Position numbers and translations under genes: made by a program. Source: Haliotis rubra (Eukaryota). Taken from it: 64,000 nucleotides of DNA. The stretch covers positions 62,001 through 126,000 of the forward strand of contig NW_025766459.1 of assembly GCF_003918875.1 (NCBI RefSeq). Reading direction: 5' to 3'. This document shows positions 35,674 through 64,000 of this stretch, one piece after another. Under the pieces are notes generated by a model. The model saw only the letters and a list, made by a program, of their open reading frames with translations. It was not told where the DNA came from and searched no databases. Positions within the stretch are counted from its first letter, which is position 1, and each line of letters opens with the position of its first letter.

Positions 35674-37345
35674 ACTCCAGACTTGGACATCTGACTTGGA
35701 TTATAGACAACATAAAGTGTAATGATTGTGTATCCTGTATGGAGGAATCGGTAGTGAAATCATTGTCAACAAACTATCCAGATATCACACAGTCAGCAGT
35801 GTCCATTGGATGATACAGATACACATACTGCTTGATATAGTTACTGTACACAAAACATACACACTTTGTTGTTCAATACAGTGATTCTGGAGACCAAAGT
35901 ACCATCTGTTGATGGGTCTGTGTTAATCATCCGTGCATGTATCAGAACCTTGACACTTCTCCCATGTCACAGACATGTATCTCCACTCTGCCTGAAGCTC
36001 GACGTTGACACAGCCTGGCCTTCTAAGAAGATTACTGTCACAGATCATTTCCAAACTGTATATATGATTACCTGCCTTATGATGAAGATGTGCCCGCTGT
36101 GCTTTCAAATTCAATGTGATGTCTTTTGTGCAAACACTGATATGTGAGAGGCTGCTTGTTGCCAGTAGATTTCTAGCAGTTGTACAGCAATACAATACAC
36201 GTTAACCTCTGTTTCAGGCAGGCACAGTTGCAATATTAACATACATTTCCAATCTAAGAGCCAGAAAATTACATGTGCAATTTATCCATTGATCAAAGAA
36301 CACCTGGTCCATGGTACCACTTGGATTTGTGTTCCCCCAGACTTACAGCAGTGGTACCGCTTGAACAGCCAGCCAGTCAGGCAGATTACTCCTAGTCACA
36401 CTGCAAGCTTGGCTCTATGGAGGGGAGAGGTTATGTTTAATGCTGGGCATGTTGTATTGTTGTCAATTTGTTTTAACTATGGATCAATTCATATTTAAGA
36501 TCACTTGAGAATGATTGTTACTTTTTCTGTTAGTACCTACAAAGAATGTAGGCAACCATTTTGTTTGATATGCTGATTTCTGTACTGCTTGTTATTCCTG
36601 TGACTGTTTGTTAGAATGGCGCCATTTGGCCGAAACACAGATGACTTCTGATGAAGCGTTCACTGTTACCATGGTTACCATGTTGTTGGCATTGTTTTGA
36701 TTCAGCTGCTCCATGTAACAGGCTACTGGAAGCAATATTTACTTGAGGACATCAAATTGTCATTTCTCTAAGCACTTGATTTATGTGGTCAAGTCGTTGT
36801 CACCTTGGCCTTCATAGCCACACAGTTGGTTTGATAGTTTGGTGCATGTTTTTACAGCCTTTATTGGTTCTGGGTATGATGGTTGTTGAATCTCTCACAC
36901 TGCAATACAAAGAGATGCATCCAGGTGCAGAGAGCCCAGTGTATGGACATCTAAAATCGTTATTTGCTCATTATTTGTTGGTATTCCAGAATCTATCAAA
37001 TGAACATTTTTTGGTCAGTCTTGTCCTGATGGCTTCTGTGGTAGCCATGCCTTCAGTATAATACAGCTGTTATACAAACAATAAAGATGACGAGCATCTT
37101 GTACTCGTATGTGCATACCCAAGTGATCACACTATCTGTTTGCTATTATGAAAATAATAATATGTAATTTTGTAATAAAATGGTGCTATTCAAAGAATGA
37201 AGTGTCTGTTTCTGTTCAGTGATAATGTGCAGATGTCACTTTTCTGCCTTTCAGAAGCATAAAAGTCTGTTTCAGCCAATAGTCAAGAGTGACTGTATTC
37301 TTGTGTTGATATTTTAATGTTTTAAGAGATCGCATGAGCAATGTT

Positions 37346-39480
37346 TCGTGGAATGACCTGGGAGGGTAGTGTTTGGTGGAATGACCTGGGACTGGGAGGA
37401 CAGTGTTTGGTGGAATGACCTTTGAGGACAGTGTTTGGTGGAATGACCTGGGAGGACAGTGTCTGGTGGAATGACCTGGGAGGATAGTGTCTGGTGGAAT
37501 GACCTGGGAGGACAGTGTTTGGTGGAATGACCTGGGAGGACAGTGTTTGGTGGAATGACCTGGGACTGGGAGGACAGTGTTTGGTGGAATGACCTTTGAG
37601 GACAGTGTTTGGTGGAATGACCTGGGAGGACAGTGTTTGGTGGAATGACCTGGGACTGGGAGGACAGTGTCTGGTGGAATGACCTGGGAGGATAGTGTTT
37701 GGTGGAATGACCTTGGAGGACAGTGTCTGGTGGAATGACCTGAGGAGGATAGTGTTTGGTGGAATGACCTTGGAGGACAGTGTTTGGTGGAATGACCTTG
37801 GAGGATAGTGTTAGGTGGAATGACCTTGGAGGATGGTGTTTGATGGAATGACCTGGGAGGACAGTGTTTTGTCGAATGACCTTGGAGGATAGTGTTTGGT
37901 GGGAATGGGTAGTGCCCTGGGAGGAAATGGACCTGGGATAAGTGTTTCAAACCTTTGGAGGATAACTGTTTGGTGGAATGACCTGGGAGGACAGTGTTTG
38001 GGTGGAATGACCTGGGATGATAGTGTTTGGTGGAATGACCTTGGGAGGATGAGTGTTTGGTGGAAATGACCTAGGAGGATAGTGTTTGGGTGGAATGGAC
38101 CTGGGATCGATAGTGTCAAGGACCTGGGAGGATGAGTGTTTGGTGGAATGACCTGGGAGGATAGTGTTTGGTGGAATGACCTGGGATGACAGTGTTTGGA
38201 GAATGACCTGGGAGGATGAGAGTGTTTGGATGGAATGACCTGGGAGGATGGGTATTTGGTGGAATGACCTGGGAGGATAGTATGTTGGGAATGACCTGTG
38301 TTTGGGTGGAATGACCTGGGAGGATAGTGTTTGAGTGGAATGACCTGGGATGACAGTGTTTGGTGGAATGACCTGGGATGACAGTGTTTGGTGGAATTGA
38401 CCTGGGAGGATAGTGTTTGGTGGAATGACCTGGGAGGATAGTGTTTGGTGGGAATGGACCTGGGAGGACAGTGTTTGGTGGAAATGACCTGGGAGGAACC
38501 TAGGATAGTGTTTGGTGGGAATGACCTGGGACAAGCAAGTGACAGTGTAGGAGGATAAGTGGGTGGAATGACCTGGAGGGATGACAGTGTTTGGTGGAAT
38601 GACCTGGGAGGACAGTGTTTGGTGGAATGACCTGGGAGGATAGTGTTTGGTGGAAATGACCTGGGAGGATAGTGTGTTTGGAGAGGAATGACCTGGGAAT
38701 AGATCCTGTGGAGGATGGTATGTGGGGACTAGGAGGACAGTGTTTGGTGGAAATGACCTAGGAGGAGGATGTGTCTGGTGGAAATGACCTGGAGTGTCAG
38801 TGTTTGGTGGAAATGACCTAGGATGACAGTGTTTGGTGGGAATAGCCTAGGAGGATAGTGTTTTAGGTGGAATGACCTAGGACTGGAGCCGACAGTGTTT
38901 GCGTACTGGAATGACCTGGGATGACCATGTGTTTTTGGTGGAAATGACCTGTCTGTTGTGGAGACCTGGGACCACATTTTCAATTTGTGGAACCTACCTG
39001 ATATGACAGTTGTCAGAGCCCTAGGAGGATATGAGTGTTTGGCGGAATGACCTTGTCAGTGACCACCTGGTGACCAGCCCTGTTTGAGTGGAAATAGCCT
39101 GGGAACGAACCACCTATTTTAGTGTTTGAACCAGTCTGTTGTCAAGACAGAACCACTCAAGTATGTTGTCAGTGTTTGGTGGAACCTGTCTGTTGTCAGA
39201 ACGAACCTGGGAGGACAGTGTTTGTTGTCAAATGAACCAGCCTAGGAGGTCTGTCTGTCAGATGAGGAGGACAGTGTTTGGAGGACCTGACCTTGTCAAC
39301 CCCTGTCTGTTGTCAGACGAACCACCTGTTGGAGGATAGAGTGTCTAGGTGGAAAGACCTGGAGGATAGTGTTTGGTGGAATGACTTGGAGGATAGTGTT
39401 TGGAGGAATGACCTGGGAGGACAGTGTTTGGTGTGAAATGACCTGGGAGGGGACATTGTTTGTGGAAATGACCTGGGAGG
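37346..39480. repeat. 28-bp G-rich minisatellite, increasingly degenerate to the right
   Basis: Unit GTGGAATGACCTGGGAGGACAGTGTTTG. Confidence 0.95.
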
Positions 39481-42674: not shown

Positions 42675-44160
42675 TACTAGGCACATAAAAAACTGTGCAT
42701 ACAAAAATTTAATATGTAAATTTATCAAACCTGTGTAGACACATAAGGATTTAAACTCAGAGATTAGTGACATGTATACAACATGCATGCATGTGCCACG
42801 TTCCGTGACGTCAGTGGGTTCGTCCTTGAGACGTGCAAAACGTTGTTGCACGTGCATTCCGGGAAAGAGAAACAAAGCAAATGAATGCCACACAATACTG
42901 TCACTTTGGAAAGCTCAACCCCTGCCCTTGCGATCGTTCAAAAAATTAAACGGCTATTGAAACGCATGTCTGCACAACGTCATGAGGCCATTGGGATGGT
43001 CCGTGGGGAATGTCTCAACGACAAGTGGCTGCACATTTCCACTGCCACCGGAACACCATTTCTGCACTGATGAGACGTTACCAGAACACAAATGACGTCA
43101 TCGATCGGCCACGTTTTGGACGTCCACGTGTAACAACGCCAAGACAGGACAGATGGATAAGGGTGACCAATCTTCGCCACAGGTTTCAGACTGCAGTGAT
43201 GACTGCCCGAACCATCCCAGGACTTCGCCGTATCCACCACAACACAGTTCGACAACGTTTACGTCATCACGGGATCAGACCACGACGTCCCGCCATACGG
43301 CCTATCCTGACACAACGTCATCGACAAGCTCGCCGAATGTGGTGCCGAAATTATGTCCGCAGACCTTTATTTTCGTGGAGAAATGTTGTTTTTACATATG
43401 AGTCCAGGTTTAATATTTCCCATAGTGATGGACGTAAACGTGCCTATAGACGCGTGGGAGAACGTTATGCACAGGCCTGTGTCTTGGAGAGGAATCGCTT
43501 TGGTGGTGGTTCCGTGATGATTGGGGGTGGAATAACAGCACGCCAAAGAACTCCTTTGGTGATTGTTCAGGGCAACTTAACTGGTGTGGGCTACAGGGAT
43601 CAGATTCTTCGACCTGTGGCAATTCCTTTTCTGCAACTTCATGGCCCTGGGTTAACATTTCAACATTCCGCCCTCATACGGCAAGGGTTGCTATGGATTT
43701 CTTGCAACACCACAACGTTGACTTACTGCCTTGGCCTGCAAATTCACCGGATCTCTCCCCGATAGAGCATGTTTCGGACGAGATGGATCGACGTCTACGC
43801 CGTCTTCCTCATCCGCCAGATAACGTCCTTGACCTTGCAACAGAACTTGAGAGAATCTGGCGTGACATCCCACAAGCCTTCCCTGCACGTTTGATAGGCT
43901 CTATGCGTCGTCGATGCACTGCTGTTCTCAATGCCGATGGTGGACATACCCATTATTGAGCTTGTGACATGGTCGTTTGACCCCTGTCCCGCTTGTGGAC
44001 TCGTGACGTCATTGTGATTGACTTTTCAATTGAAATTCTCCCGACTTGTTATGGTCTCATGATCCCTCCATTCAAGTTTATATGTACCTTTGACATTGTT
44101 ATCGTACTTATCAACTGGGATAATATTTTGACAATGCACAGTTTCTTTATGTGGCTAGTA
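42675..44160 (+). mobile_element. Full-length but defective Tc1-family (DD34E-type) DNA transposon
   Basis: TIRs TACTAGGCACATAAAAAACTGTGCA / TGCACAGTTTCTTTATGTGGCTAGTA, TA TSD, internal transposase. Confidence 0.92.
42966..43959 (+). pseudogene. Tc1 transposase pseudogene
   Basis: HTH-GRPR N-terminus, first catalytic D mutated (FTYESRF), deletion/frameshift removing the QDN motif near 43665, WPANSPDLSPIEH intact, further frameshift near 43005. Confidence 0.9.
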
Positions 44161-44708: not shown

Positions 44709-47524
44709 ATGTATATCGGTGTAATACTGTTTACTGTTATGACCGTCAGTCAAGTGCTGCCCTGCGACACCGCATACAGACTCTGTAATGTCACGGATGA
44801 GGCTCATCTATCAAACTGCTCCGAGAAGAACGGGGTTGGAACATCTCTGTCTCCAGCCGACCGGAAAGTTGACCCAACACTTCCAGGACGCTCACACGAG
44901 AAAGGGACAGTGAAAACACCTTTCCCCTCAGGAGGGAATGGTACAGATGGGGCACATCGTCTTTCAGGAGGGAATGGTACAGATGGGGCACATCGTCTCT
45001 CAGGAGGGAATGATACAGATGGGGCACATCGTCGCTCAAGAGGGAATGGTACAGATGGGGCACATCGTCTCTCAGGAGGGAATGGTACAGATGGGACACA
45101 TCGTCTCTCAGGAGTGAATGGTACAGATGGGGCACATCGTCTCTCAGGAGGGAATGGTACAGATGGGACACATCGTCTCTCAGGAGGGAATGGTACAGAT
45201 GGGACACATCGTCTCTCAGGAGTGAATGGTACAGATGGGGCACATCGTCTCTCTGGAGGGAATGGTACAGATGGGACACATCGTCTCTCAGGAGGGAATG
45301 GTACAGATGGGACACATCGTCTCTCAGGAGGGAATGGTACAGATGGGACACATCGTCTCTCAGGACGGAATGGTACAGATGGGGCACATCGTCTCTCAGG
45401 AGGGAATGGTACAGATGGGACACATCGTCTCTCAGGAGGGAATGGTACAGATGGGGCACATCGTCTCTCAGGAGGGAATGATACAGATGGGACACATCGT
45501 CTCTCAGGAGGAATGGTACAGATGGGGCACATCGTCGCTCAAGAGGGAATGGTACAGATGGGACACATCGTCTCTCAGGAGGGAATGGTACAGATGGGGC
45601 ACATCGTCTCTCAGGACGGAATGGTACAGATGGGGCACATCGTCTCTCAGGACGGAATGGTACAGATGGGGCACATCGTCTCTCAGGAGGGAATGGTACA
45701 GATGGGACACATCGTCTCTCAGGAGGGAATGGTACAGATGGGACACATCGTCTCTCAGGACGGAATTGTACAGATGGGGCACATCGTCTCTCAGGAGGGA
45801 ATGGTACAGATGGGACACATCGTCGCTCAAGAGGGAATGGTACAGATGGGGCACATCGTCTCTCAGGAGGGAATTGTACAGATGGGGCACATCGTCTCTC
45901 AGGAGTGAATGGTACAGATGGGACACATCGTCTCTCAGGAGGGAATGGTACAGATGGGACACATCGTCTCTCAGGAGTGAATGGTACAGATGGGGCACAT
46001 CGTCTCTCAGGAGGGAATGGTACAGATGGGACACATCGTCTCTCAGGAGGGAATGGTACAGATGGGGCACATCGTCTCTCAGGAGGGAATGGTACAGATG
46101 GGACACATCGTCTCTCAGGAGGGAATGGTACAGATGGGGCACATCGTCTCTCAGGAGTGAATGGTACAGATGGGGCACATCGTCGCTCAAGAGGGAATGG
46201 TACAGATGGGGCACATCGTCTCTCAGGAGGGAATGGTACAGATGGGACACATCGTCTCTCTGGAGGGAATGGTACAGATGGGACACATCGTCCCTCTGGA
46301 GGGAATGGTACAGATGGGGCACATCGTCTCTCTGGAGGGAATGGTACAGATGGGGCACATCGTCTCTCAAGAGGGAATTGTACAGATGGGGCACATCGTC
46401 TCTCAGGAGGGAATTGTACAGATGGGGCACATCGTCTCTCAGGAGGGAATGGTACGGACGAGACACCGCTTCTCTCAGACACGACATATAACCGGGTTAG
46501 TGGTGTCCTCATGAAACTAAACATCCCCTTCATCGTGATGGGGACGGTCCTGAACACTATCAACATCTGCGTCTTCTGCCGAAAGTCGATGCGTTCCAGC
46601 ACCAACGCCTACCTGTTGGCTAGCAGCATCTCTCAGCTCCTGTACAGTCTCGTCATGGTCCCATACACCGTCAGGTTGGTCACGTACGGAAACACCACCA
46701 ACCTCTTCTCCATCATGTTCGGCATCTACGTTGCCAACTACGTCGCGGTGGTTCTCAGGCGATTCACCTTCATCATTGCCTGCGTTGTTTCCATGGAAAG
46801 GTTTTTGGTGACCACGACGCCGTTGAAGGCCAAGCAATACCGCTTGGTTCACTCACCTGGACAGTTCATCATGGGTGTTTCTCTTTTCTCCGTGCTCGTC
46901 CATATACACAGCCTCGTCCGCAACACCGTCATCACCAACCACAAAGATGGGATCACAACCTACAGTGTCTGCGAGACTGGTTTTTACAAGAATCACGTGT
47001 CCGTGGTCACGGCGTGGTCGACGACAGCCAGGGTGCTGGCTGTTTATCTGGCCATTACGACGGCGCTCATCTTCAATATCGTCGTTGTCATCTCCCTTCG
47101 TCGTCAGAGGCAGTTCAGAGAAAATATCACCAACGCCAGAGTGGTAGACAAGATGAAAGCGCGGGAGAAGCAGACGACAGTCACGATCCTTGTCACAAAC
47201 TGCCTGTACTTAGTGCTCTGCGTGCCCATGGTCACCAACTCCATGGCCTTTGACCTCAGCCCCGTCTACGGTTACTTTTCTCACTACTACAAGAACGTGT
47301 ACATGGTGATACAAGACTTAGGCTCCACCTGTGTCCTGCTGGGTTTGTCCGTGGACTTTTTCTCCCACATGATGCTCAGTGAGATGTACAGAGCTACATT
47401 CTTGTGTATGTTCAAGCCAAAGTGTGTTGCAATACCCTTGACACACTCGGAATACCAGCTCGAAGACTCGAAGTCCGATAACTTTAAGAGCGTTTCAAAT
47501 GTCACCTTGACCTCTCATCTGTGA
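44709..47524 (+). CDS. Intronless rhodopsin-family GPCR (FMRFamide/sex-peptide-receptor-like group) with signal peptide and ~42x 12-aa repeat ectodomain; ~938 aa after repairing one 1-nt deletion at 45510-11
   Basis: Signal-like MYIGVILFTVMTVSQVLPC. Seven hydrophobic segments in ~46500-47400 with GTVLNTINICVF..KSMRSSTNAYL (TM1/2), SMERF (DRY equivalent) and REKQTTVTIL...LC.P (TM6). ORFs 44661-45908 and 45905-47524 join if one G is restored in a repeat unit. Confidence 0.85.
44928..46460 (+). repeat. 36-bp coding minisatellite, ~42.5 copies
   Basis: Unit TCAGGAGGGAATGGTACAGATGGG(G/A)CACATCGTCTC = SGGNGTDG(A/T)HRL. Confidence 0.98.
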
Positions 47525-48001
47525 GTGTGACGGATTTTGAAACTAACTACATGTTTAAAAATGTGGTTTCTGTGATATAAAATGTCATTCTGATAAAATT
47601 CATTTGATGGAGTTGTAAAGGCTGGAACGCCGTAAGTACGAACTGGCTGGAGGATAAATAGCGCGATGAATATACCAAGGGACTGTAGTGCCCGGAACAG
47701 AATGATCCCAGCTACACTTGGGTTTGCCTCAAGGGTTTTAGCAAAGAGGTGAACGTGCAAGACCCGCACCACGTCGGATTCTCCTCCCTCGTTATACGGC
47801 GTTGTAGAGATGGATAAGGTGTCAACTACGCTCAAACTGTACGTTCTCCTTACATTCACGTTGTGTAGCAGTGTCAAAGCAGTATGATCGCGATGTATTC
47901 CGGCAACAGAAATAAATTGGTACGTGCGTTTGCATGCATGACGTCATTGACTATGAAACATTGGATCACACTATTACATCACTTAGCCAAGAACAGTACA
48001 T

Positions 48002-49230
48002 GTACAACTGCAGTACGCCGTTAGCTTTGGGTTGTTCAGCTGCAATATGTCATTCAGCTTTAGACTGTACAACTGCAGTACGCCGTTAGCTTTGGGTTGT
48101 TCAGCTGCAATATGTCATTCAGCTTTAGACTGTACAACTGCAGTACGCCGTTAGCTTTGGGTTGTTCAGCTGCAATATGTCATTTAGCTGTAGTATATCA
48201 TCTAGTCATGGACTGTACAGCTGTAGTATATCATCTAGTCATGGATTGTACAGCTGTAGTATATCATCTAGTCATGGATTGTACAGCTGTAGTATATCCT
48301 CTAGTCATGGATTGTACAGCTGTAGTATATCCTCTAGTCATGGATTGTACAACTGTAGTATATCCTCTAGTCATGGAGTGTACAGCTGTTGTATATCATC
48401 TAGTCATGGATTGTAAACCTGGAGGTTATCATCAAGTCATGGATTGTACAACTGTAGTATATCATCTAGTCATGGATTGTAAACCTTAGAGTATATCATC
48501 AAGTCATGGATTGTACAACTGTAGTATATCATCTAGTCATGGATTGTACAACTGTAGTATATCATCTAGTCATGGATTGTACAACTGTAGTATGTCATCT
48601 AGTCATGGATTGTACAAATGTAGTATATAATCTAGTCATGGATTGTACAACTGTAGTATGTCATCTAGTCATGGATTTTCAACTGTAGTATATCATCTAG
48701 TCATGGATTGTACAACTGTAGTATATCATCTAGCCATGGATTGTACAACTGTAGTATATCATCTAGTCATGGATTATACAACTGTTGTATATCATCTAGT
48801 CATGGATTGTACATATGTAGTATATCATCTAGTCATGGATTGTACAACTGTAGTATATCATCCCCCATGGATTGTACAACTGTAGTATATCATCTAGTCA
48901 TGGATTATACAACTGTTGTATATCATCTAGTCATGGATTGTACATATGTAGTATATCATCTAGTCATGGATTGTACAACTGTAGTATATCATCTAGCCAT
49001 GGGTTGTACAACTGTAGTATATCATCTAGTCACGGATTGTACAACTGTAGTATATCATCTAGCCATGGATTGTACAACTGTAGTATATCATCTAGTCATG
49101 GATTGTACAACTGTAGTATATCATCTAGTCATGGACTGTACAACTGTTGTATATCATTTAGTCATGGACTGTACAACTGTTGTATATCATCTAGTCATGG
49201 ATTGTAAACCTGCAATATATTATCTAGAAT
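48002..49230. repeat. 33-bp minisatellite (~31 copies) preceded by ~3 copies of a related 65-bp dimeric unit
   Basis: Unit GTACAACTGTAGTATATCATCTAGTCATGGATT; 65-mer at 48002-48190. Confidence 0.95.
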
Positions 49231-62773: not shown

Positions 62774-64000
62774 ATGAACCGTCGTAAAGTAAGTAAAGAA
62801 AAGTATCTCCAATCAACTTTTGATCATGCAAGTTTCTCTTGTCAGACAAGGGTGTTATCGTTTTCAAAGGCATCAAGAATTCCTAAAAAAAATTCCTAAA
62901 AACAACATGTTTGATACATTGCACAATAAATACGATGGAACAAAATGTGGTCACAACACCGTTTTACCGGAAACAGAGGAAAACCGTCTGGCCGACTGGG
63001 TGCTGGACATGTCAAGAATCGGGTACCAGGGTAGAACTTTTGACTACTGTGAAAAGCATTCTGGACGTGGATAATCGTGTCAATCCGTTTAAAAACAATA
63101 AACCAGGAAATGATTGGTTTTATGGCTTCTTAAAGCGACATCCCAGCATTTCAGTCAGGACACCGCTTCAATTGGGGAAGGAGCGGGCTATCGTAACATT
63201 GTCGGCTGGCATCAAAATGTCCTTGATTATGTAAACAATCATGTACAGGACCCCACTGTCATGCTTGATCCGTCTCGAATATATAACGCAGATGAATCGG
63301 GGTTTCCTCTCTGCCCGAGGAGTGGGAAAGTATTATCTGTGAGGGGTACACCTATTGTCTATCAGTTTGGTTCAAGTGACAAGACCCAAATCACTGTCAT
63401 GGCTTGTATGAGTGCCAGTGGGCATTATATTCCCCCTATGTTGGTATTCCCTGGCAAGCGGTTTGCTTACAATGTCTTGGAGGGTTTTGAGGGAGCTGCG
63501 ATGGGACGATCGGACAATGGTTGGATGGACGGTGTACTCTTTGTTGACTGGTTGAGGGATGTGTTCAGTCCTTCAGTCAAGCATAAAGGAGTACAATTTC
63601 CTGTCCTGTTGTTTGTTGATGGACAGAAATGTGCAAAAAGAATGATGTAATTCTTTACTGTTTGTAAGAACATGCATCTCACTTGATGCAACCTTTGGAC
63701 CTTCGCCTATTCAGCTCGCTCAAAGAGAATTGGAAGCAAGCCGTTCGTCAGTATCAGATGGAACATGTTGGGGATTTCGTTACCAAGCAAACTTTTGCCC
63801 GAGTTTTTAAATCTGCATGAGTGAAATCAACAACTGTTGCCATTGCCATTCATGGCTTCAGAGATGCAGGTCTTTTCCTCCTGAATGAAGACGTAGTCCT
63901 GAATACACATAAGTTGATCCCCAGCACCATATTCTGTTCCGATAAACCGGAAAGTTCTCATCGTTCTCTGCCAGTAACAGATTCATTCCTCAAGCCTCTA
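62774..64000 (+). pseudogene. pogo/Tigger-superfamily (HTH_psq + CENP-B HTH + DDE_1) transposase pseudogene
   Basis: EENRLADW, PGNDWFYGFLKRHP, IYNADESGF, ITVMACMSASG...PP, GWMD, LLFVDG and H..QPLD motifs spread across several frames, with deletions and stops. Confidence 0.9.

What the first reader, a model, noticed from the sequence alone, without database searches (positions are those of the whole stretch)
44709..47524. Orphan GPCR whose extracellular N-terminus is a ~500-aa glycan bottlebrush encoded by a 36-bp VNTR
Seen: signal peptide, then about 42 copies of SGGNGTDG(A/T)HRL, then an intact 7TM domain, all in one exon. Every unit carries an N-x-T sequon, and the variants NDT and NCT keep it. 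Four units read HRRSRG, a minimal R-x-x-R proprotein-convertase site (near 45030, 45535, 45822, 46183). Established: peptide/chemoreceptor-like class-A GPCRs normally have short N-termini; long mucin-like stalks are typical of adhesion GPCRs, and protease-unmasked tethered ligands define PARs. Inference: the receptor may have a length-polymorphic, heavily glycosylated stalk acting as a spacer, lectin/microbe decoy or protease-sensitive switch that could shed near-identical glycopeptides.
Basis: partly seen in the sequence, partly recalled or inferred. Interest (0 to 1): 0.85.

Follow-up and report, generated by a model that had tools for sequence, protein, structure and literature searches.

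The report
Abalone receptor with repeat-built sugar stalk
An abalone gene for an unstudied cell-surface receptor carries, in front of its membrane part, a long stalk of 22 to 49 copies of a 12-residue sugar-attachment unit; the layout is kept in three abalone species, but nobody has shown the gene is expressed, and this copy has a one-base break that may be a sequencing error.

Summary
The window is Haliotis rubra (GCA_003918875.1). At 44927-46455 lie 42 copies plus one degenerate copy of a 36-bp unit reading SGGNGTDG(A/T)HRL. A hydrophobic leader (ATG 44709) precedes them and a rhodopsin-type 7TM domain follows (Pfam 7tm_1; AF2 pLDDT 89.5; stop 47524).

A 1-bp deletion (GGG to GG, 45509-45511) breaks the frame. 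I could not test it against reads. The assembly is Nanopore-based.

The strongest new evidence is comparative. H. cracherodii and H. rufescens have the same locus as one unbroken ORF (1141 and 822 aa) with 49 and 22 units. Only this frame is stop-free in all three species. A family-wide motif just before TM1 (PLLSDTTYN) and the predicted start of helix 1 lie upstream of the Met used by the RefSeq models (331 and 336 aa). Those models are therefore N-truncated.

Relatives form a gastropod-only orphan class A family. Members commonly carry a hydrophobic, signal-peptide-like leader and sequon-rich N-termini of 80-380 aa. One Littorina member has its own repeat.

Not supported: selection on individual residues or sequons within units, and a conserved furin site. 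Expression, glycosylation and within-species length polymorphism are untested.

Verdict: a real, unannotated variant of a known kind, of moderate interest. Earlier notes of this scan reported probable assembly frame breaks elsewhere in this genome.

The parts
44709..44762 (+). Start codon and hydrophobic leader MYIGVILFTVMTVSQVLP (signal-peptide-like)
   Evidence: ATG at 44709. Mean Kyte-Doolittle hydropathy is 2.0-2.3 over the first 12-residue windows. It aligns with MAGMYVCVILATIITVSEVLP of H. cracherodii and H. rufescens. No signal-peptide predictor was run.
44763..44927 (+). Non-repeat N-terminal segment with conserved RLCNVT...LSNCS (two Cys, two sequons)
   Evidence: 60% aa identity to H. 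cracherodii over 73 codons, dN/dS 0.40. It has 0 stops in this frame against 3 and 3 in the other two. No Pfam family matches.
44928..46438 (+). 42 units of 36 bp encoding SGGNGTDG(A/T)HRL, each with an N-x-T sequon
   Evidence: The NGT frame has 0 stops here and in both other species, while all other frames have stops in at least one species.
45509..45511 (+). 1-bp deletion in a G run (GGAGGGAAT reads GGAGGAAT) that breaks the reading frame
   Evidence: No laid contig covers 45424-45560, so it is untested. The assembly is wtdbg Nanopore plus Racon and Pilon, merged with DBG2OLC (PMC6774278).
46439..46474 (+). Degenerate last unit SGGNGTDETPLL, the likely single-copy template of the repeat
   Evidence: 29 of 36 nt are identical to the consensus unit. 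Its end runs into the conserved juxtamembrane motif.
46466..46492 (+). Juxtamembrane motif PLLSDTTYN (family pattern [LIV][LIV]S.[ED].Y), upstream of the Met codons at 46511 and 46538
   Evidence: Alignment of 40+ gastropod relatives. The AF2 helix 1 starts at residue 9 of the query, which is 46478.
46478..47524 (+). Class A 7TM domain, helix 8, C-tail and stop codon (47522-47524)
   Evidence: Pfam 7tm_1 E=4.4e-9. AF2 pLDDT 89.5. Foldseek top hits are ETB, opioid, apelin and ghrelin receptors with TM-scores 0.6-0.8. dN/dS 0.25 against H. cracherodii.
47911..47916 (+). AATAAA, a possible polyadenylation signal
   Evidence: Pattern match only.

Best explanation
This is the Haliotis rubra copy of an abalone gene for an orphan rhodopsin-type (class A) GPCR of a gastropod-specific family.

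In its intact form (938 codons if the one-base gap is bridged) the protein would be, in order:
- a cleavable or anchoring hydrophobic leader;
- a short Cys-containing segment;
- a roughly 520-residue Gly/Thr/Arg/Asp-rich, presumably disordered stalk of 43 twelve-residue units, each with one N-x-T sequon;
- the family's juxtamembrane motif;
- seven helices.

The stalk arose by tandem amplification of the 36 bp that encode the twelve residues just before that motif. The genome is very rich in minisatellites. Because the period is a multiple of three, gain and loss of units keep the 7TM in frame.

I infer that selection keeps the frame open and the stalk hydrophilic and glycosylatable in bulk, but not the individual residues. 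The stalk most likely works as a long N-glycosylated spacer or shield in front of the ligand pocket. That would be an exaggerated form of the sequon-rich N-termini common in this family.

The 1-bp deletion in H. rubra is more likely an uncorrected Nanopore homopolymer error than a real lesion.

Shown: architecture, conservation, family membership and the origin of the unit. Inferred: translation, glycosylation, the spacer role and the assembly-error reading.
For: 1. Orthologous loci have the same layout in one unbroken ORF. H. cracherodii is L001 7571-10996, 1141 aa, 49 units. H. rufescens is L003 8543-11011, 822 aa, 22 units. Flanking 12-, 27/28- and 33-bp arrays lie in the same order, which supports orthology.

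2. The NGT frame is the only one of six without stops in all three species. The 188-codon non-repeat N-terminus has 0 stops, against 8-11 in the other frames.

3. The motif PL[LI]SD[TS]TYN matches a family-wide pattern just before TM1. It lies upstream of the Met of XP_071082655.1 and XP_046357847.1, and that Met is Arg in H. rubra. The AF2 helix 1 starts at residue 9, before Met20 and Met29.

4. The 7TM is under purifying selection: dN/dS 0.25 at dS 0.68.

5. phmmer finds 380 representatives. All ten looked up are gastropod or unnamed. Many carry a hydrophobic leader and sequon-rich N-termini of 80-380 aa. A H. rufescens paralogue has leader, stalk and 7TM in one coding exon.

6. The last unit is 29/36 identical to the consensus and runs into the conserved motif.

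7. The assembly method is known (PMC6774278) and the deletion sits in a G run.
Against: - No RNA evidence. The only runs found are three runs of unknown kind from one 2018 sample.
- No transcript-derived protein matches the 7TM or the N-terminus in the 5.8-billion-protein set.
- RefSeq models in two species start downstream of the repeat.
- The frameshift could not be checked.
- Within-array variants show no excess of synonymous changes. By my own tally of the variant lists (no script or test was run for this), sequon-breaking variant types are about 6 of 87, against roughly 10 expected.
- Non-coding minisatellites next to the gene are also conserved in position and in unit sequence. Conservation of the array alone therefore proves nothing.
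- H. cracherodii and H. rufescens are close (dS 0.04), so there are effectively two independent lineages, and one of them carries the break.
- The leader's similarity to a paralogue's leader is not significant (E=0.14).
Confidence: 0.6

Rival explanations
1. The frameshift is real. The H. rubra copy, or the allele of the sequenced inbred animal, is a recently inactivated pseudogene or null allele. Translation from 44709 would end at 45908, giving a secreted repeat protein without a 7TM. The 7TM could then be made only from Met 46511 or 46538, with a truncated helix 1.
For: The deletion is in the deposited assembly. Lineage-expanded orphan GPCR families lose members often (general knowledge). 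No expression evidence was found.
Against: There is a single lesion in 2.8 kb, sitting in a G run of a Nanopore assembly that was polished once with short reads, which map poorly inside a 94%-identical array. The 7TM has no stop and shows dN/dS 0.25. Orthologues are intact. Other follow-ups of this scan reported small frame breaks in conserved genes of this assembly (leads only).
Confidence: 0.22
2. The array is transcribed but is not in the mature protein, or not always. It may be removed wholly or partly as an intron inside the exon, or the mRNA may start downstream. The receptor would then have a short or variable N-terminus.
For: Every unit holds a donor-like G|GTACAG and an acceptor-like TCTCAG|G. 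Joining one unit to a later one would remove 27+36n nt, which is in frame (read from the sequence; noted). Gnomon models start after the array.
Against: The donor is weak. The conserved motif and the start of helix 1 lie upstream of every downstream Met, so a downstream start truncates TM1. The long open frame and the leader would have no reason to persist in two lineages. The truncated models are as easily explained by repeat masking (inference).
Confidence: 0.13
3. One reading: the stalk is a protease-sensitive switch or decoy, cut at RxxR sites to shed glycopeptides or to unmask a tethered ligand.
For: There are five minimal RxxR sites in H. rubra, and 11 and 3 in the other two species. Class A receptors with regulated N-terminal cleavage exist; the beta1-adrenergic receptor is one such case, going by the title and abstract of PMC5554155 (I did not open the paper).
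Against: The four HRRSRG share one coupled variant (CGCTCAAGA), so they are copies of one event. In the other species RxxR sits at a different place in the unit (GRIHR), so no site is conserved. RxxR is a low-information pattern in a sequence with 10.6% Arg. No conserved peptide lies between the last site and TM1 other than the family motif.
Confidence: 0.05

Closest known systems
Gastropod orphan class A GPCRs (e.g. Lottia gigantea XP_009049921.1 and XP_009046734.1, Patella caerulea KAK6177461.1, H. rufescens XP_048252701.1 'F59B2.13-like', Littorina saxatilis XP_070182325.1)
   Same: The 7TM domain is homologous (E 1e-42 to 1e-8; 25-37% identity). They share the juxtamembrane [LIV][LIV]S.[ED].Y motif, a hydrophobic leader and a sequon-rich, low-complexity N-terminus, and the paralogue checked has a single coding exon. 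The Littorina member has an 18-aa x7 repeat at the same position.
   Different: None of the 150 listed relatives has a stalk this long or this regular. Here 22-49 near-identical 12-aa units make up more than half of the protein.
VNTR-encoded glycoprotein stalks of single-pass membrane proteins (GPIb-alpha 39-bp, PSGL-1 30-bp, MUC1 60-bp repeats; from my own knowledge)
   Same: An in-frame minisatellite encodes a glycosylated, extended, length-variable spacer between the membrane and the outside.
   Different: Those stalks are Pro/Ser/Thr-rich and O-glycosylated. This one is Gly-rich (29%) with almost no Pro and has one N-x-T per unit. It is attached to a 7TM receptor.
Adhesion GPCRs with mucin-like stalks (ADGRE, ADGRG4)
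   Same: A long glycosylated extracellular stalk in front of seven helices.
   Different: Those are class B2, with 7tm_2 and a GAIN/GPS autoproteolysis domain. Here the match is 7tm_1, and Pfam finds no domain in the N-terminus.
Human DRD4 exon 3 48-bp VNTR (from my own knowledge)
   Same: A class A GPCR with an in-frame minisatellite in its coding exon.
   Different: The DRD4 repeat lies in the third intracellular loop and has 2-11 copies. It is not an ectodomain stalk.
Protease-activated receptors
   Same: A class A, peptide-receptor-like fold, with Arg-containing sites in the N-terminus.
   Different: There is no conserved cleavage site and no tethered-ligand sequence.

Membership tests
Class A (rhodopsin-family) GPCR | Match to Pfam 7tm_1 above the gathering score | tested here: met
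   36.6 bits against a cut-off of 30.5, E=4.4e-9, residues 38-268
Class A (rhodopsin-family) GPCR | Seven-helix bundle with helix 8, similar to solved class A structures | tested here: met
   AF2 pLDDT 89.5, pTM 0.87, 7 helices plus H8 plus an ECL2 hairpin. The top 50 listed Foldseek PDB hits (of at least 500 counted) are all class A receptors, nearly all peptide-binding, with target-normalised TM-scores up to 0.81.
Class A (rhodopsin-family) GPCR | Canonical micro-motifs: E/DRY (TM3), CWxP (TM6), NPxxY (TM7) | tested here: inconclusive
   ERF is present with an invariant Arg116, and Pro258 of TM6 is invariant. TM7 reads DFxxH/Y in place of NPxxY in this protein and in the family consensus.
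Gastropod orphan class A family (unnamed) | Significant full-length 7TM similarity plus the juxtamembrane [LIV][LIV]S.[ED].Y motif | tested here: met
Adhesion GPCR (class B2) | GAIN/GPS domain and 7tm_2 | tested here: not met
   No Pfam family in window 44709-45508 or in L001 7571-8134; the 7TM matches 7tm_1 only
Protease-activated receptor-like | Conserved protease site followed by a conserved tethered ligand before TM1 | tested here: not met
   The positions of RxxR differ between species, and the four HRRSRG are copies of one variant
Mucin-type (PTS) tandem-repeat domain | Pro/Thr/Ser-rich repeats | tested here: not met
   Stalk composition is G 29%, T 12%, S 8.5%, P 0.4%
VNTR (length-polymorphic within a species) | Different copy numbers among individuals | not testable with these tools
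   Only between-species differences were seen: 42.5, 48.8 and 21.8 copies
N-glycoprotein | Occupied sequons | not testable with these tools
   45 N-x-S/T sequons in 590 residues; occupancy is unknown

The most novel reading that the evidence does not exclude
The stalk is a selected, length-tuned N-glycan brush on a chemosensory or microbe-sensing class A receptor. Independent repeat expansions at the same juxtamembrane position in different gastropods (Haliotis 12-aa units, Littorina 18-aa units) would then reflect recurrent selection for reach, shielding or lectin/pathogen interaction, rather than tolerated minisatellite drift.
Probability: 0.15. Interest if true: 0.75.

Novelty: new variant of a known kind. 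Interest (0 to 1): 0.5.

Why it matters
If it is translated, this is, to my knowledge, an unreported architecture. A class A GPCR would have more than half of its length made of an in-frame minisatellite carrying one N-glycan site every 12 residues, with a copy number that differs about two-fold (49 versus 22 units) between sister species.

It gives a natural length series (22, 42 and 49 units). That series could be used to ask what an N-terminal glycan stalk does to trafficking, ligand access and signalling of a class A receptor.

In practical terms, the RefSeq models of the orthologues are N-truncated. This is probably because repeat masking hides the stalk, so such architectures may be systematically missed in minisatellite-rich mollusc genomes.

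Against that, the receptor is an orphan with no expression evidence. The stalk's residues also look neutral. The plain reading, a tolerated expansion in a disordered region, is of moderate interest only.

Tried and rejected
1. RNA evidence. The look-up of sequencing runs returned only three runs of one 2018 sample, kind unknown.

The tool itself suggested asking for a part with fewer copies. The part 45340-45690 gave only four 33-66-nt unitigs, and none lay over 45424-45560. The frameshift therefore stays untested.

3. A search for long-form proteins (640-2000 aa) with this 7TM found none. A search with the 188-aa N-terminus found none. A paralogue's leader is not significantly similar (E=0.14).

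4. Tests for selection inside the array. Synonymous variant types are 2/10, 11/39 and 10/38, against 25-28% expected. Only 3-4 of 108 possible substitutions would create a stop in the coding frame. The stop-free frame inside the array therefore has little power on its own.

5. Conservation of the unit between species as evidence for coding. The two consensus units differ at 6 of 36 positions by my hand comparison. I rejected this argument, because the neighbouring non-coding arrays also lie at the same positions in the other species and align there at about 69-73% identity.

6. The minus-strand 604-aa ORF across the array. I rejected it, because those frames acquire stops in H. cracherodii and H. 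rufescens.

7. P0051's internal 48-aa repeat is a TM5-TM6 duplication, not an N-terminal stalk repeat.

8. Two literature searches found no description of this family or of a class A GPCR with a VNTR stalk. The library is incomplete.
Full report
**What is in the window**

The window matches contig QXJH01000241.1 of GCA_003918875.1. The assembly paper identifies that accession as Haliotis rubra, the blacklip abalone (PMC6774278).

TRF reports a 36-bp array at 44927-46455 with 42.5 copies, 94% matches and no indels. A consensus search finds 42 hits, all inside the array, where none is expected by chance.

Read in frame, the units are SGGNGTDG(A/T)HRL with a few variants (G to V, R, D or C; L to R or P). 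Every unit keeps N-x-T.

Upstream, an ATG at 44709 opens a hydrophobic leader (MYIGVILFTVMTVSQVLP). A 55-residue non-repeat segment with two Cys and two sequons follows.

Downstream, the same frame runs through a degenerate 43rd unit into a 7TM domain and stops at 47524.
- The 7TM passes Pfam 7tm_1.
- With a 50-sequence family alignment it folds at pLDDT 89.5 and pTM 0.87, as seven helices, helix 8 and an ECL2 hairpin.
- Foldseek places it among peptide-type class A receptors (ETB, opioid, apelin, ghrelin) at 11-18% identity.

At 45509-45511, GGAGGGAAT reads GGAGGAAT. The NGT frame moves from phase 0 to phase 2, and the ORF that starts at 44709 ends at 45908.

**Is the repeat coding?**

The window alone cannot say. 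The consensus unit is open in five of six frames. Sixteen minisatellite arrays cover 20% of these 64 kb. I therefore looked at other species.

The only close proteins in the 5.8-billion set are XP_071082655.1 (H. cracherodii, 331 aa) and XP_046357847.1 (H. rufescens, 336 aa). Both start at MVVG, just before TM1.

Their genomic loci tell more. Both have a 36-bp array at the same place, with 48.8 and 21.8 copies. In both, one unbroken ORF runs from MAGMYVCVIL through 188 non-repeat codons and 49 or 22 units into the 7TM, giving 1141 and 822 aa.

Two counts support a coding frame:
- The NGT frame is the only one of six that is stop-free in all three species.
- The non-repeat N-terminus has 0 stops, against 8-11 in the other frames.

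Flanking 12-, 27/28- and 33-bp arrays lie in the same order, which supports orthology.

**The annotated start is too far downstream**

An exhaustive phmmer search found 380 representatives. The ten I looked up come from Lottia, Patella, Nucella, Littorina and Haliotis, plus one unnamed Logan contig.

In an alignment of more than 40 of them, a motif [LIV][LIV]S.[ED].Y sits just before TM1. In the three abalone genes it is PL[LI]SD[TS]TYN. It lies upstream of the RefSeq Met, and that Met is Arg in H. rubra.

The AF2 model starts helix 1 at residue 9 (46478). That is before Met20 (46511) and Met29 (46538). A downstream start would therefore cut into helix 1. The RefSeq models are most simply N-truncated; I infer that repeat masking caused this.

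**Family context**

Many relatives carry a hydrophobic, signal-peptide-like leader and N-termini of 80-380 aa rich in S, T and N-x-S/T.
- A H. rufescens paralogue encodes leader, stalk and 7TM in one coding exon.
- A Littorina saxatilis member has its own 18-aa x7 repeat directly before the motif.
- A Lottia member has degenerate FANGT repeats.

The abalone stalk is therefore an extreme form of a family trait.

**Origin of the unit**

The last, degenerate unit (SGGNGTDETPLL) is 29/36 identical to the consensus and runs into the conserved motif.

In the California species the segment GNITITTP.P.E.NGTDG.PL.S occurs on both sides of the array.

The array thus grew by tandem duplication of the 36 bp that encode the residues just N-terminal of the juxtamembrane motif. 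Units are more alike within a species than between species.

**Selection**

| Comparison | Region | dN/dS | dS |
|---|---|---|---|
| H. rubra vs H. cracherodii | 7TM | 0.25 | 0.68 |
| H. rubra vs H. cracherodii | non-repeat N-terminus | 0.40 | 0.67 |
| H. cracherodii vs H. rufescens | N-terminus and 7TM | 0.41-0.53 | 0.04-0.05 |

Inside the array I find no sign of residue-level constraint.
- Synonymous variant types are 2/10, 11/39 and 10/38, against 25-28% expected.
- Sequon-breaking variant types are about 6 of 87, against roughly 10 expected. This is my own tally from the variant lists; no test was run, and the difference is small.
- Only 3-4 of 108 possible substitutions would create a stop in the coding frame, so the absence of stops inside the array is weak evidence on its own.
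- The neighbouring non-coding arrays also keep their position and align between species at about 69-73% identity. The conserved 36-bp unit is therefore no argument either.

The case for translation rests on three things: the long open non-repeat N-terminus, the position of the conserved motif and helix 1, and the family architecture.

**The frameshift**

The assembly was built from Nanopore reads with wtdbg, two rounds of Racon and one of Pilon, then merged with a DBG2OLC hybrid (PMC6774278).

A lost G in a G run, inside a 94%-identical array where short reads map ambiguously, is a typical residual error. This is inference.

On 45340-45690 only four short unitigs were laid, and none lay over 45424-45560.

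Other follow-ups of this scan reported small, probably artefactual frame breaks in conserved genes of this assembly. Those are leads only. I put the assembly-error reading at about 60-65% and a real null allele at about 20-25%.

**The protease-switch idea**

H. rubra has five minimal RxxR sites: four HRRSRG and one HRLSRG. The four HRRSRG share a coupled two-substitution junction (CGCTCAAGA), so they are copies of one event.

H. cracherodii and H. rufescens have RxxR elsewhere in the unit (GRIHR), 11 and 3 times. No site is conserved.

**What remains open**

I found no RNA evidence. These blanks are weak, but they leave expression, splicing within the array, glycan occupancy and within-species polymorphism untested.

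Every unit has a donor-like G|GTACAG and an acceptor-like TCTCAG|G. Unit-to-unit splicing would be in frame (27+36n nt). The donor is weak, but this cannot be excluded.

**Verdict**

This is a real gene architecture, unannotated in RefSeq: a gastropod orphan class A GPCR with an in-frame minisatellite stalk of N-x-T units, present in two abalone lineages.

I rate it a new variant of a known kind, and of moderate interest. Its function is unknown. The most economical reading is a tolerated, frame-preserving expansion of a disordered glycosylated N-terminus.

Noticed in passing
window 48188-49227; L001 13491-20995; L003 11739-21011: A 33-bp minisatellite about 660 bp downstream of the GPCR stop lies in the same position in three abalone species. 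Its copy number differs greatly: 31.5 in H. rubra, against 227 or more and 281 or more in the other two, where both arrays run off the fetched loci.
   Followed up: partly
window 37342-38882; L001 3901-6327; L003 6724-7482: A 27/28-bp minisatellite upstream (unit ...TGTTTGGTGGAA...) is also positionally conserved, with 53, 90 and 28 copies. Non-coding minisatellites here persist across a divergence of dS about 0.7.
   Followed up: partly
whole window: Sixteen tandem arrays with TRF score 200 or more and periods of 22-105 bp cover 20.3% of the 64 kb.
   Followed up: partly
L001 10992-12893 versus window 47484-47537: In H. cracherodii a 117-bp array of 16 copies begins at the receptor's stop codon. 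Its unit matches a single-copy stretch at the 3' end of the H. rubra gene.
   Followed up: no
L001 7636-7923 and L003 (same ORF): H. cracherodii and H. rufescens carry a 97-codon in-frame insertion in the N-terminal region. It repeats the leader's hydrophobic segment (VCVILATIITVSE / VCVILVTVLAASE).
   Followed up: no
window 43010-43765 and 63114-63650: Transposase fragments: HTH_Tnp_Tc3_2 (Tc1/mariner type) just upstream of the receptor gene, and a DDE_1 endonuclease fragment near the window's end.
   Followed up: partly
P0119 (Littorina saxatilis XP_070182325.1) residues about 160-280: A relative of the same GPCR family has an independent 18-aa x7 tandem repeat (QTTISPDSEQTDATVSQY) directly before the juxtamembrane motif.
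   Followed up: partly
window 44791-46605, minus strand: A 604-aa ORF on the opposite strand of the array (PFPPERRCAPSV...) was called as a 580-aa gene in the protein collection's gene calls. It is a by-product of the stop-poor repeat, and the corresponding frames have stops in the other species.
   Followed up: yes
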